Origin: Mobula hypostoma
Lineage: Eukaryota
NCBI RefSeq assembly: GCF_963921235.1
Contig: NC_086108.1
Coordinates: 70,122,001 to 70,186,000 of the forward strand
Reading direction: 5' to 3'
Length of the DNA stretch: 64,000 bases
The translations under genes and the position numbers were made by a program. Below the pieces are notes generated by a model that worked only from the letters and a program-made list of their open reading frames with translations, had not been told where the DNA came from and did not search any database. Below are positions 52,958 through 57,079 of the stretch, in pieces; within the stretch, counting starts at the first letter, position 1, and each line of letters begins with the position of its first letter.

Positions 52958-53664
52958 CTTCGTGGATAGGTTGTTTTTGGATTAGTTGATAGAGAATGGA
53001 AAATTTTTCATCTGTTCAACAAATTAGTTAACCTCTTAAGTTGCATTAGTGTTCGTTCTTAACCCATATCAACCTCATCTCACCTTTCTTCTACATTATA
53101 TTGTTCTAACAAAACCTCCTGCAAACTGTGCCAGAATGAAGGTATGACTTTTTCTCCAGACTCAGAAACATTTTCTAAATCTGTAGGATGTATTTGAAGA
53201 ATCTGCACAAACCTCTTATCTTTTGCAATGTCACCGAGCTTCACATTGCCTCCAAATTAATCCAAAATCAATCAGGAATAATTTTACTATTTCAATTTAA
53301 TCAATAGAGGATAATGCTTTTGTTAGTTTCTTATAGATGTTCTCCTATAAATATGGAATGATTGACAGAGGAGGAGGCTGCTCAAATATGGAAAAAGGCT
53401 TAATCAACAGAGGAAAGGTGAAAAGCTGATACACATCTTTAAAATTATAGAACGGCCTTACACACTAGAAAAGTTGTTGAAAACAAAATGTAGATACTGG
53501 AAATTTAAAAGTAAATTGGTAAACACTGGAAATTCTCTGGAGGTAAAGTAGCATTTGTGCAAAGAGAAACATTAACTCTTCCTCTTGGAGAAAAGCAGTT
53601 TCCATTGTAGGCAACTCCACAACAATGGGCCATAAATAGACACTAGGTTAATCCCTAATAAACT

Positions 53665-56600
53665 CAGGGGTGCAGAGCTGCTGGAGCTCACCGGAGCACT
53701 GCTCTGGCACCTCTGTAAAAAAAGGTCAAAATAAACAAGCGGGGAATTTAACAGCGGCCGCATATTAAATAGAGGGAATTTTACGGAAGCAGGGGCTGGG
53801 GAGAGGGGGTGGAGGCTGGTGGGGAAAATACCACTAATAATATTAGGATATTTGATCGTTTTTGGTGAAATCCTGGAGCTGTGACTGTTTTGTGAAATTC
53901 CTGCTCGCTCGACCCATTGTCCCAGCATACCCTGCTGTAGATTCCTGCCATTTCACAGATCCTCAGTCTCTCTCCAGCACTCGTTATTTGAGCATTGTTC
54001 GCTGAGAAAATAAAAATCTTAGATCTTTTGAAAAGTGGCATGTCGCTTGCTGAAGTGGGCTGTAAGGTCGCTAAGAATGAATCGAGCATTCACACAATAA
54101 AGCAGAAAGAAGCTGAAATTCGTGGAAGTGTTAGTGCTACCCCTACAAAGGCAAAAATGGTCTCTCTGGTTCATGATAAAGTGCTTGCAAAGACTGAGAA
54201 AGCATTAAGTGTGTGGCTAGAGGACATGTCACAGAAGCATATCCCTGTTGATGGCACAATTATGCGTGAAAAAGCACTTGGCCTCTATGAGCACTACTGT
54301 GAGGGGGTTGAGGAGAGCGAGAGGAAGGAGTTTAAGGCTAATAAGGGATGGTTGGCTAGCTACGTAAAGCTCTACAGTCTCAAGAACTTAAAGATCACCG
54401 GAGAATTGGCATGGCAGATGTACCAAGTATCCTATTATGGAGCTAATCAAAATACACACTTGAAGTCTCTCAGGAAAAAAATTGTTGATCACAAACTATC
54501 AAAAACTCACACTGATGCTCTAAGTGTTGAAAATATAGCTATTGAAGATGCTGTCGGAAAATTATGTGACACCATGAAAGCTTCGCATCTAAAGGCAACT
54601 TGTTCAATTTTTCATTCTGCATATTATATAGCTCAGAATGATCATACTCTGATCACTTTGGCTTATTGGAACTTCAAAACAAAATGGTATTGACATTGGA
54701 ATTGGACTGCATTCCCGCACTTGTGCTACAGAGATAATCAATCACATAACCATTAATATGAAAAAGAAAATTTGCTAGCATATCAAGCAGATACATGGCA
54801 AGTTTTCTGTTCTCATTGATGAATCAACAAGCCTGAGCGTTAAAACCGCCCTAATAGTTTATTTCAAATGTGAGAGTGATAAGGAAGGTGATCCCCATTT
54901 TATGTTTTTAGATCTAATTGAACTGCCTGATCAGAAAGCAGCAAATATTGCAAAGCATCTATTGAACTGTCTCAATAACCATAGATTTGATGCCTCTTAC
55001 TTGAAACAGAACCTTGTAGCATTTGCTAGTGATGGGGCGAGCGTAATGCTGGGTGTCAAATCTGGTGTTGCTACAATTCTCAAGGAGCCTGATGTGATAA
55101 TTTGGCACTGTCTTAATCACAGATTAGAACTTGCAGTAGGTGATTTGGTGAGAAAAGTTCATGGAATAAATCATTTTCAATCATTTATGGACAAATTGTA
55201 CTCTGTTTACAGTAGATTACCTCTAAATCAAAAGGAACTGTCTGAATGTGCCTCTCAACTGGAACAACAAATTTGCAAACTAGACCATGTTCTGGGCACC
55301 AGCTGGGTAGCTAGCTTATTTCGAACAGTTTCAACAGTGTGGCAAATTATGAAGCACTGTGTTCTCGTTTTGAAAAAGCAATGAAGGATGAAACGAGATC
55401 TGGGAGTGACAGAAATACCTATGAAGGTCTGTTGAAAAGACTCTCTTCGGAACAGTTTTTATTGGACTTAGCTCTAATGTATGACACATTGCATGAACTT
55501 GATTTACTGTCAGAGTATTTACAGAATCGCACTACTATGATTGTTTATGCAGACAAGCTGATTCAACAGAGCATAATATCACTGCATGGACTGAAAGAGC
55601 AACCAGGTACAAAAACTCTAGAAGCTCAAGAGGCAGTTGAAAAGGGGAAGTTTGGAGAAATTACCTTAACAAGCAACAACAAAATTGTCTCCATTAATTA
55701 TCTACAGTTTCTTACCAGTCTTATAAACAATTTGCAGCACTGTATGTTCACGGCAACATTCTTGAAAGGTTCGCAAACTTCTAAACCTCAAAGTATGTAT
55801 AAATCCCTGCTAAATGAAATGTGTTTCCTTGATAAAGATAACTGGCCTGCTGAAATACCGCCTAATTATAGAGAAGCTGCAATATCATCTCTCTGTAAGA
55901 GGTTTAAGCTTTCTTCTTCCTCTGTAATAAATGCCTTCAGAGATTATGTGGAAGATTGTGGATGCCGCATCCCCCACGATTTACGCCCATTACTGAGCTG
56001 TTCACAAGTTATCCCTATTAGTACTGCTGAATGTGAGAGAGGATTCAGTCCCATGAACTTGATAATAACAACAACATGCTCAAGAATTCTCATAAATCAT
56101 GTATCAGCACTTATGTTTGTTCAACTACACAGACCTCCTCTAGTTCAGTGGAATCTTGAGCTGTATGTCACATCATGGCTGCGGTACCACAGATCAGCAG
56201 ATGACACCAGGACAAGAGTTGCTTCAGACCCCCAAACACATTTTACGCCTGACCCTTTGAGGAAATTATTGTGAAGCTTTTCATTGGTGGCATTTGGTAA
56301 GGAGGTAATTACTTTTAAATTGGTAAAATACATGATTACCATCTTTTTCTTTAATTGTTTGATAATTATATTTTATGATAATTAGTGAGTGCAACCGTGC
56401 AATACTTTGTCATATTATTAAATTATTTAAGTATCATATGTTTTATTGTACCAGTTGTACACTGAAATGTAGAGATAGGCTATAATCTTGTTAATGCCTT
56501 AACTACTGTATCACTATATTTCTGTAGAGCTCTGGAATTCATATATTTCTTTCATCTTGGTTTAGTGCTTGACATTACAAGAATCTCTCAATTTGTGTAC

Positions 56601-56742
56601 CTGCTCATTACATAAATGCGGAATGGGGCAAGGAAGTTGCCCAGTACATGAAATTAGCAGGTACACTAATTGCGTGTGACATACATAGAAAGGATGTTGG
56701 AAATGGAAAGCATTTTGTCAGTTTATTAGCATTTCACCCCTG
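53665..56742 (+). mobile_element. 3078-bp hAT DNA transposon (KIAA1586/ZNF862-like transposase) carrying a Tigger-type N-terminal segment
   Basis: TIRs CAGGGGTGCAGAGCT vs CAGGGGTGAAATGCT (12/15 match). 8-bp TSD AATAAACT (53657-53664) / AATAAATT (56743-56750). Confidence 0.9.
53995..56274 (+). pseudogene. Disrupted chimeric transposase: pogo/Tigger CENP-B-type HTH region (about 53998-54420) fused to a KIAA1586-like hAT core
   Basis: The N-part EKIKILDLLKSG..NESSIHTIK..EKALSVWLED..FKANKGWLASY..LKITGE is Tigger-like. The C-part has SLRKKI.DH, SVLIDEST, FASDGASVMLG, WHCLNHRLELA, STAECERGFS and HRSADDTRTR. Frameshifts near 54650-54690 and 55340; TAG at 54776-54778. Confidence 0.85.
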
Positions 56743-57079
56743 AATAAATTGCAGAGGGATTTCAACCCAAATATTGTTACTCAGTTGTAGAGTAATGCAA
56801 CAACACTTAACTCTACGCCCGTATTCTCTACTGAATCCTGTATTTTTACAACAAATCTTTCTTGGTGAAAAAGGAGAGGATGTCCGAACAAATATTGCCT
56901 GGGAAAACCCATTCTCTGTCGGACACCAACTACTTGTACGCAAGTTTTAGAAAAGCCATAAAGTGAATTATCAAGAGCTCATTGGAAAATGCGAACACAG
57001 AGATAGTATAATTTCCTCGTTGGATATGCAGCTTCACACAAGCCTCTATTCTTTTGCTGGGTAATACCAACATACTCAG

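What the first reader, a model, noticed from the sequence alone, without database searches (positions are those of the whole stretch)
53665..56742. Cross-superfamily chimeric transposon: Tigger/pogo DNA-binding domain fused in frame to a KIAA1586-like hAT catalytic core inside hAT ends
Seen: hAT TIRs and an 8-bp TSD bound a 3078-bp element. One open frame (53995-54693) runs from a CENP-B-type HTH region (EKIKILDLLKSG...FKANKGW...KITGE) straight into KIAA1586-like sequence (YQVSYYG..SLRKKI.DH). The junction GGAGAATTGGCATGGCAGATG (about 54400-54420) can be read as the Tigger GE-SASAD motif with a 1-nt loss, or as the hAT W-x-x-Y segment, suggesting a microhomology join. Downstream D (LIDES), D (SDGA), CxxH and E (AECERGFS) motifs are all present, but this copy has frameshifts and a stop. 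No Tigger TIR is visible. Known: KIAA1586/ZNF862-type hAT proteins do not normally carry pogo HTH domains. Inference: either a domain-swapped transposase family that was once mobile, or a one-off capture during gap repair.
Basis: partly seen in the sequence, partly recalled or inferred. Interest (0 to 1): 0.75.

Follow-up and report, generated by a model that had tools for sequence, protein, structure and literature searches.

The report
Dead hAT transposon carrying Tigger front end
A decayed hAT jumping gene in a devil-ray genome has had the start of its enzyme gene replaced by the front end of an unrelated Tigger jumping gene, most likely by accident and not as a working hybrid enzyme.

Summary
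The chimera is real. hAT ends (53665 and 56742) and an 8-bp target duplication (7 of 8 bases) bound 3078 bp. Window 53923-54412 comes from a ray Tigger element. It holds about 80 bp of Tigger 5' UTR and Tigger codons ~26-163 (Pfam HTH_Tnp_Tc5, E 1e-8). A 131-bp deletion removed the Tigger ATG. From 54412 onward the sequence is a KIAA1586-like hAT transposase.

Tigger copies lose similarity to the window at 54412 (two of four run on weakly to 54427). Two ordinary hAT copies gain it exactly at 54412. Both ordinary copies carry a normal N-terminus with a CxxC motif that the window lacks. The hAT part has three frameshifting deletions and one stop.

No protein spanning the junction turned up in 1.84 billion cluster representatives, in two word searches, or in JGI metagenomes.

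My best reading is that a Tigger inserted into the hAT and a later deletion fused the two frames by chance. The result is a dead, non-autonomous element.

One unchecked scan note (s1-144758) reports a similar 3123-bp element elsewhere in this genome.

Interest is low to moderate.

The parts
53657..53664 (+). Left copy of the 8-bp target-site duplication (AATAAACT)
   Evidence: Matches 56743-56750 in 7 of 8 bases.
53665..53678 (+). hAT 5' terminal inverted repeat (CAGGGGTGCAGAGC)
   Evidence: Matches the reverse complement of the 3' end of ordinary copy L006 in 13 of 14 bases. Matches the window's own 3' end in 12 of 15.
53679..53922 (+). 5' subterminal stretch, presumed to be hAT; origin not verified
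   Evidence: Shares the GCTGGAGC and GGAGCACTG motifs with the L006 terminal region. No match to L001-L007 otherwise. It could instead be DNA captured along with the Tigger piece.
53923..54002 (+). Tigger 5' end and 5' UTR fragment, starting in a terminal-repeat-like motif (CAGCATACCCTGCTGTAG)
   Evidence: 79% identical to L004:608-685 and L005:1-72, which lie upstream of the Tigger ATG. Similarity stops at 53923-53925.
54002..54003 (+). Site of a 131-bp deletion relative to Tigger copy L004 (686-816); it removed the Tigger ATG and about 25 codons
   Evidence: The blastn blocks L004:608-685 and L004:817-1220 abut in the window.
54003..54412 (+). Tigger coding piece, codons ~26-163: partial CENP-B_N plus a complete HTH_Tnp_Tc5 (54196-54387)
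   Evidence: Pfam. Nucleotide identity is 87% to L001, 80-81% to L004/L005 and 76% to L003. Protein identity is 88% to Mobula hypostoma P0173 aa 25-162. 149 of the 150 listed hits are Tigger-type and almost all end near query residue 139.
54408..54416 (+). Tigger-to-hAT junction, in frame, with short microhomology (T/GGCA)
   Evidence: L001 and L003 similarity ends at 54412; L004 and L005 run on weakly to 54427. hAT similarity (L002, L006) starts at 54412.
54412..56274 (+). KIAA1586-like hAT transposase gene from about codon 119 to its stop; broken by deletions after 54639 (4 bp), 54679 (1 bp) and 55343 (1 bp) and by TAG at 54776-54778
   Evidence: 82-86% nucleotide identity to L002, L006 and L007. 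85-93% protein identity to the intact 549-aa relative P0201. Indels listed. Dimer_Tnp_hAT scores 17.7 bits here (below the cut-off) and passes in relatives.
56275..56742 (+). 3' untranslated region and 3' terminal repeat (ends CACCCCTG); includes 56395-56674, which is absent from L006 and L007
   Evidence: L006 ends with the same CACCCCTG at the homologous place. The window has 13 nt where L006 has 37 nt just inside the end.
56743..56750 (+). Right copy of the target-site duplication (AATAAATT)

Best explanation
**What it is.** This is a dead, non-autonomous derivative of a KIAA1586-like hAT transposon of devil rays.

**What was replaced.** The stretch from the hAT 5' untranslated region to about codon 118 of the transposase gene is gone. 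That stretch included the CxxC half of an N-terminal zinc-finger-like motif. In its place sits the front end of a resident Tigger element: its end-like motif, its 5' UTR and its first ~163 codons, which encode the two CENP-B-type helix-turn-helix domains.

**Most likely route (inferred).** A Tigger inserted into the 5' part of a hAT copy. One later deletion, joined at 1-5 bases of microhomology, removed the rest of the Tigger and the start of the hAT gene. The join happened to be in frame, which is a 1-in-3 chance.

**Consequences (inferred).** The composite keeps both hAT ends, so ordinary hAT transposase could still move it in trans. The fused frame itself is unlikely to have served as a transposase. 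Its DNA-binding part would recognise Tigger ends, not hAT ends. This copy has since lost the Tigger ATG and carries four breaks in the hAT part.

**Shown:** the four homology boundaries, the ordinary N-terminus in relatives, and the breaks.

**Inferred or unresolved:** the order of events, and insertion-plus-deletion versus template switching. Whether the Tigger piece arrived before or after the hAT landed at this site is unresolved.
For: - Tigger copies L001 and L003 match the window only up to 54412. L004 and L005 run on weakly to 54427.
- Ordinary hAT copies L002 and L006 match only from 54412 onward.
- L002 and L006 are 87.5% identical to each other. They share an ordinary N-terminus with CKVC, which the window lacks.
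- The Tigger piece includes non-coding 5' UTR (53925-54002 matches L004:608-685). Its similarity stops at 53923-53925, and the L005 contig begins within 6 bases of that point.
- A 131-bp deletion removes the Tigger start codon.
- The left end is a true terminal repeat of this hAT family (13 of 14 to L006). The right end is at the homologous place.
- No junction-spanning protein appears among 1.84 billion cluster representatives. 149 of the 150 listed hits are Tigger-type and almost all end near residue 139. The one hAT hit, P0118, has an ordinary N-terminus.
- No junction-spanning protein appears in the word searches or in JGI metagenomes.
- The hAT part carries three frameshifting deletions and one stop.
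Against: - The bases just before the Tigger-like end are CC, not the TA duplication a Tigger insertion should leave.
- The Tigger terminus is defined by one flanked copy only (L004). Its likeness to the Tigger1 end is from my memory, not a test.
- No 3' Tigger end survives to confirm a nested insertion.
- The ordinary hAT 5' end was not recovered. The origin of 53679-53922 is therefore unverified, and a captured genomic fragment would look the same.
- The junction is in frame, and the ancestral composite (before the 131-bp deletion) may have had a complete ATG-to-stop fusion frame.
- An unchecked scan note (s1-144758) describes a second 3123-bp 'hAT ends enclosing a Tigger transposase' in this genome. 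If it is a sibling, the composite did move.
Confidence: 0.5

Rival explanations
1. Capture by template switching during repair (Pack-TIR-like gap filling). After excision or a break in a hAT copy, repair synthesis jumped to a Tigger copy elsewhere, possibly copying some of its flank as well. It then jumped back into the hAT gene at a short microhomology. This replaces the 5' part in a single event.
For: - There is short microhomology at 54408-54416, and the two parental sequences look alike for about 15 bases past the junction.
- There is no TA next to the Tigger-like end.
- 53679-53922 matches nothing recovered and could be captured flank.
- Tan et al. [quoted passage not shown]
Against: - Similarity to Tigger copies starts at a motif that looks like a Tigger end, and the L005 contig breaks there too. 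That fits an intact Tigger terminus better than an arbitrary switch point.
- If flank was also captured, the same pattern would arise, so this argument is weak.
Confidence: 0.3
2. A once-working domain-swapped transposase family. The Tigger DNA-binding domain and the hAT catalytic core formed one protein that moved its own element. This copy is a decayed member of that family.
For: - The junction is in frame, and the helix-turn-helix region is open.
- All hAT catalytic motifs are present.
- The unit has hAT ends and a target duplication.
- Before the 131-bp deletion, the Tigger ATG would have headed the frame.
- One unchecked note reports a similar element elsewhere in the genome.
- The junction stretch shares 23-50% of its sampled 31-mers with DNA runs of five coded organisms.
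Against: - No junction-spanning protein was found.
- The join breaks the hAT CxxC...HxxSxxH motif.
- A Tigger DNA-binding domain would be expected to recognise Tigger ends, not the hAT ends that bound this element. This is established knowledge of transposase end recognition, and an inference here.
- Ordinary relatives with the normal N-terminus exist, and one has a long intact frame (P0201). A helper enzyme for movement in trans is therefore available.
- An in-frame join has a 1-in-3 prior.
Confidence: 0.07
3. Assembly artefact. The Tigger and hAT halves were joined wrongly by the assembler.
For: Both halves are repeats, and repeats invite mis-joins.
Against: - The join is in frame at a microhomology.
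- The left hAT end and its target duplication lie upstream of the Tigger piece, so two separate mis-joins would be needed.
- Runs from several other organisms hold up to half of the 31-mers of 54250-54570. Known Tigger and hAT relatives are only 80-87% identical, so this is hard to get from separate halves. This last point is an inference.
Confidence: 0.03

Closest known systems
KIAA1586-like hAT transposons (NCBI names relatives 'E3 SUMO-protein ligase KIAA1586-like' in Mobula hypostoma, Mobula birostris, beetles and fish)
   Same: - From 54412 to the stop, the window is 85-93% identical in protein to the intact relative P0201 and 78-88% to P0181, P0182 and P0184.
- It has the 8-bp duplication, CAGGGGTG ends, the D/D/CxxH/E motifs and a hAT C-terminal dimerisation region.
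   Different: The first ~118 codons and the 5' UTR of the ordinary element (seen in L002 and L006) are missing. Tigger sequence stands in their place.
Tigger/pogo elements of rays (L001, L004, L005; the N-terminal region of Mobula and Hemitrygon proteins P0173, P0172, P0151)
   Same: 53923-54412 is 80-87% identical in DNA to these copies. It encodes CENP-B_N (partial) and HTH_Tnp_Tc5.
   Different: There is no DDE_1 catalytic domain, no 3' end and no TA duplication. The ATG and 25 codons are deleted.
Nested transposon insertions later trimmed by internal deletion, and internally deleted non-autonomous hAT elements such as maize Ds
   Same: The outer element keeps both ends and can be moved in trans. 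The inner part is foreign or deleted. The junctions show short microhomology.
   Different: Here the leftover inner piece happens to be a coding DNA-binding region from another superfamily, joined in frame.
Pack-TIRs / Pack-MULEs (Tan et al. 2021, PMC8277862)
   Same: Foreign DNA is carried between the ends of a terminal-inverted-repeat transposon. Gap filling or fork switching is proposed as the origin.
   Different: Pack-TIRs are defined by captured host gene fragments. Here the captured DNA is another transposon, and most of the carrier's own gene is retained.

Membership tests
hAT superfamily element | 8-bp target-site duplication | tested here: met
   AATAAACT and AATAAATT, 7 of 8.
hAT superfamily element | Short terminal inverted repeats shared with other copies of the family | tested here: met
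   12 of 15 between the window's own ends. 13 of 14 between the left end and the L006 3' end. The right end is at the homologous place.
hAT superfamily element | Transposase with D, D, CxxH and E motifs in hAT order | tested here: met
   LIDES, SDGA, CLNH and AECERGFS read directly from the sequence and conserved in P0181, P0184 and P0201. This is motif level only; no structural test was done.
hAT superfamily element | hAT C-terminal dimerisation domain (Pfam PF05699) | tested here: inconclusive
   The window piece scores 17.7 bits against a cut-off of 21.4. Close relatives pass: P0181 22.2, P0187 23.4, P0186 25.2. The Atlas feature search gives hAT dimerisation clusters at 0.96.
Tigger/pogo element | CENP-B_N plus HTH_Tnp_Tc5 DNA-binding region | tested here: met
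   HTH_Tnp_Tc5 scores 35.5 bits against a cut-off of 22.2. CENP-B_N is truncated at 12.6 bits against 21.2. Relatives carry both.
Tigger/pogo element | DDE_1 catalytic domain | tested here: not met
   No DDE_1 hit in any piece. Similarity of L001 and L003 ends at 54412, and L004 and L005 fade out by 54427.
Tigger/pogo element | Two Tigger terminal repeats flanked by TA | tested here: not met
   Only a 5' end-like motif at 53923-53940. No reverse-complement partner in the window or the loci. The preceding bases are CC.
Active chimeric (domain-swapped) transposase family | Several copies with the same junction and different target duplications | not testable with these tools
There is only an unchecked note of a second element.
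Active chimeric (domain-swapped) transposase family | At least one intact fusion reading frame somewhere | tested here: not met
   None. The only proteins with both Tigger HTH and hAT-type domains (P0172, P0173) are GTF2IRD2-like gene models with a different hAT part and a different junction.
Pack-TIR-like carrier of foreign DNA | Foreign DNA between the ends of a terminal-inverted-repeat element | tested here: met
   53923-54412 is Tigger-derived and lies inside hAT ends. Under the strict definition the cargo should be a host gene fragment, and here it is not.

The most novel reading that the evidence does not exclude
The fusion was once a working enzyme: a Tigger CENP-B-type DNA-binding domain driving a hAT catalytic core. 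It amplified as its own family in devil rays. That would be a natural swap of DNA-binding domains between two transposase superfamilies.
Probability: 0.07. Interest if true: 0.75.

Novelty: new member of a known kind. Interest (0 to 1): 0.3.

Why it matters
If this is only an accident, it is a clean, base-resolved example of how nesting and deletion (or template switching) can join coding pieces of two transposon superfamilies in frame. Joins of this kind are the raw material for new fusion proteins.

It would matter more if the junction proved to be multi-copy with an intact frame. No natural exchange of DNA-binding domains between pogo and hAT transposases turned up in the three literature searches run here on this question.

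Tried and rejected
**Read-level and DNA look-ups that failed**
There is therefore no read depth, no junction reads and no RNA evidence.
Queries started at 54130 or ended at 54084.
- Local scripts on the closed machine did compare fetched loci with the whole window file.
- Exact look-up of the window's own 311-aa and 160-aa frames found nothing on record.
- DNA of the Mobula and Hemitrygon genome records could not be fetched because the files are too large.

**Searches that came back empty or uninformative**
- NCBIfam gave nothing useful.
- PDB sequence searches gave only a weak CENP-B match.
- Two JGI metagenome scans were blank. They probably hold no ray DNA, so this says little.
- A findings search by sequence was blank.
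- A text search for the Tigger1 end sequence returned only unrelated primer hits.

**Leads I dropped**
- A 27-nt likeness of the Tigger-end motif beside the hAT end in L006 scores within the range of shuffles and has no inverted partner. I dropped it as evidence.
- I did not compute dN/dS on the two halves. The branches mix the active-lineage history with decay after the fusion, so the result would not discriminate between the readings.
Full report
**1. What is at the coordinates**

The stretch 53665-56742 begins CAGGGGTG and ends CACCCCTG. The two ends match in 12 of 15 bases. The flanking 8-mers are AATAAACT and AATAAATT, a 7-of-8 match.

Such end-plus-duplication pairs are not rare by chance across 64 kb. 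I found 5 in the window against about 2 in shuffles. Two independent facts fix the ends here:
- An ordinary copy of the same hAT family (L006) ends with the same CACCCCTG at the homologous place.
- The window's left end matches the reverse complement of that copy's end in 13 of 14 bases. It also shares the GCTGGAGC and GGAGCACTG motifs.

The open frame 53995-54693 (232 aa) is real, but it has no ATG at its head. Pfam finds HTH_Tnp_Tc5 at aa 68-131 (E 1e-8, above the curated cut-off). It also finds a truncated CENP-B_N at aa 2-43, below the cut-off. A weak PDB match to the CENP-B DNA-binding domain agrees with this.

**2. Anatomy by homology**

I searched the 232-aa frame against 1.84 billion cluster representatives. 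It gave 935 hits. 149 of the 150 listed are Tigger-type, and almost all end near query residue 139. The one hAT-type hit is P0118. I fetched contigs for several hits.

| Window | Origin | Evidence |
|---|---|---|
| 53665-53678 | hAT terminal repeat | |
| 53679-53922 | presumed hAT 5' region; origin unverified | |
| 53923-54002 | Tigger 5' UTR, starting in a terminal-repeat-like motif (CAGCATACCCTGCTGTAG) | L004 and L005, 79% |
| between 54002 and 54003 | 131-bp deletion that removed the Tigger ATG and about 25 codons | L004:686-816 missing |
| 54003-54412 | Tigger codons ~26-163 | L001 87%, L004/L005 80-81%, L003 76% |
| 54412-56274 | hAT gene from about codon 119 to the stop | L002 82%, L006 83-84%, L007 86% |
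| 56275-56742 | hAT 3' region and terminal repeat | |

- Tigger copies L001 and L003 match the window from about 54004 and stop at 54412. L004 and L005 match from 54003 and run on weakly to 54427.
- L004 and L005 also match 53925-54002, with sequence that lies upstream of the Tigger ATG.
- Ordinary hAT copies L002 and L006 start matching exactly at 54412. L007 covers 54724-56394.
- At the junction, the Tigger side reads GAATCGGCAT and the hAT side reads GAGTGGCAAAC. The window reads GAATTGGCATGGCAGATG. That is an overlap of 1-5 bases.

**3. What the ordinary element has in place of the Tigger piece**

P0118 (on L002) and the start of L006 share an N-terminus that contains CKVC. They are 87.5% identical to each other in DNA. 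The window keeps only the downstream HKLSKTH.

The join therefore falls inside what looks like a CxxC...HxxSxxH zinc-finger-like motif. This reading is at motif level only. Pfam does not recognise the region.

The hAT family is alive or recently alive in devil rays:
- P0184 (Mobula hypostoma) and P0182 (Mobula birostris) are named KIAA1586-like by NCBI. They are 85-88% identical to the window's C-terminal piece.
- P0201 is a 549-aa unbroken frame, 85-93% identical to the window's pieces.

Against these relatives, the window's hAT part shows deletions of 4 bp after 54639, 1 bp after 54679 and 1 bp after 55343. It also has an in-frame 6-bp deletion at 55087 and a TAG at 54776-54778.

**4. Is the junction found elsewhere?**

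No protein spanning the junction was found:
- The representative search found none.
- The word search with aa 46-232 of the frame (candidates of 103-327 aa) found none.
- The search for long proteins carrying this Tigger DNA-binding region (420-1335 aa) found none of the window's type.
- Two JGI metagenome scans found none.

The only proteins with both Tigger HTH and hAT-type domains are GTF2IRD2-like gene models of Hemitrygon and Mobula (P0172, P0173). They have a different hAT part and a different junction.

These blanks are weak evidence. Decayed copies give short frames, length filters apply, and ray genome DNA could not be fetched.

Two indirect hints point the other way:
- DNA runs of five coded organisms hold 23-50% of the sampled 31-mers of 54250-54570. 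Known separate Tigger and hAT relatives are only 80-87% identical. Such shares therefore fit close copies or orthologues of the whole stretch better than the two halves held apart. This is an inference, and it could not be checked.
- A first-stage note (s1-144758) describes a 3123-bp 'hAT ends enclosing a Tigger transposase' elsewhere in this genome. It is unchecked.

**5. Mechanism**

Both breakpoints of the replacement are sharp. The Tigger piece carries its own 5' UTR. Its similarity to L004 stops where the L005 contig also begins. The motif there resembles the Tigger1 end as I recall it, which is a lead and not a test.

That pattern fits a Tigger that inserted into the 5' part of a hAT copy. 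A single deletion from Tigger codon ~163 to hAT codon ~119 would then have followed. I give this route about 0.5.

Template switching during repair, as proposed for Pack-TIRs (PMC8277862), fits almost as well. It is favoured by the missing TA and by the unverified origin of 53679-53922. I give it about 0.3.

Under either route the in-frame join is a 1-in-3 accident. The composite is non-autonomous, and ordinary hAT transposase could move it in trans because both ends are kept.

A working fusion transposase is unlikely, about 0.07, for three reasons:
- The Tigger domain should recognise Tigger ends, not the hAT ends that bound this element.
- The hAT N-terminal motif is cut.
- No intact fusion frame was found.

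**6. Comparison with known things**

The hAT part is a member of the KIAA1586-like hAT group, by close similarity and by the superfamily hallmarks. The Tigger part is a fragment and fails the tests for a complete Tigger element.

The whole belongs with nested or trimmed and cargo-carrying terminal-inverted-repeat elements. Three literature searches found no report of a pogo-hAT domain swap.

**7. Limits**

- Local scripts on the closed machine did compare fetched loci with the whole window file.
- Copy number, an empty site, transcription and assembly correctness are untested.

Noticed in passing
proteins P0172 and P0173 (no locus; NCBI models of Hemitrygon akajei and Mobula hypostoma): Some isoforms of ray GTF2IRD2-like gene models begin with about 185 residues of Tigger sequence (CENP-B_N plus HTH_Tnp_Tc5). 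These run in frame into the usual MAQVATT start, then a GTF2I repeat and the hAT-derived C-terminus. The Tigger part stays open in both genera. This may be a real host gene built from two transposase superfamilies, or a read-through of a Tigger fragment in the 5' UTR.
   Followed up: partly
L003:155-2446 (P0001) and P0171: An intact 763-aa Tigger transposase on a Logan contig is 96% identical over its DNA-binding region to a skink (Tiliqua scincoides) protein. It is 75% identical in protein and 76% in DNA to the ray Tigger piece. This is an unusually close likeness between a squamate and a ray, and might reflect horizontal transfer.
   Followed up: no
window 56395-56674: About 280 bp in the element's 3' region is absent from ordinary copies L006 and L007. 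It holds its own 25-nt inverted repeat (56589-56613 and 56648-56672). It is either a small insertion here or a deletion in the other lineage.
   Followed up: partly
L006:768-1398 and L006:6021-10493: The ordinary hAT copy on L006 is split by an insertion of about 630 bp. About 2.9 kb from its 3' end lies a Ty3/gypsy-type retroelement with an unbroken 1490-aa pol frame.
   Followed up: no
protein P0201 (Logan contig of 2178 bp, not fetched): A 549-aa unbroken frame of the same hAT family, at least 90% like the Mobula hypostoma copy, suggests the family was active recently. Its frame starts right at the position matching window 54640. Its contig might reach the junction region.
   Followed up: partly
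The tool says the filter also trips by chance. I worked beside them from then on.
   Followed up: no
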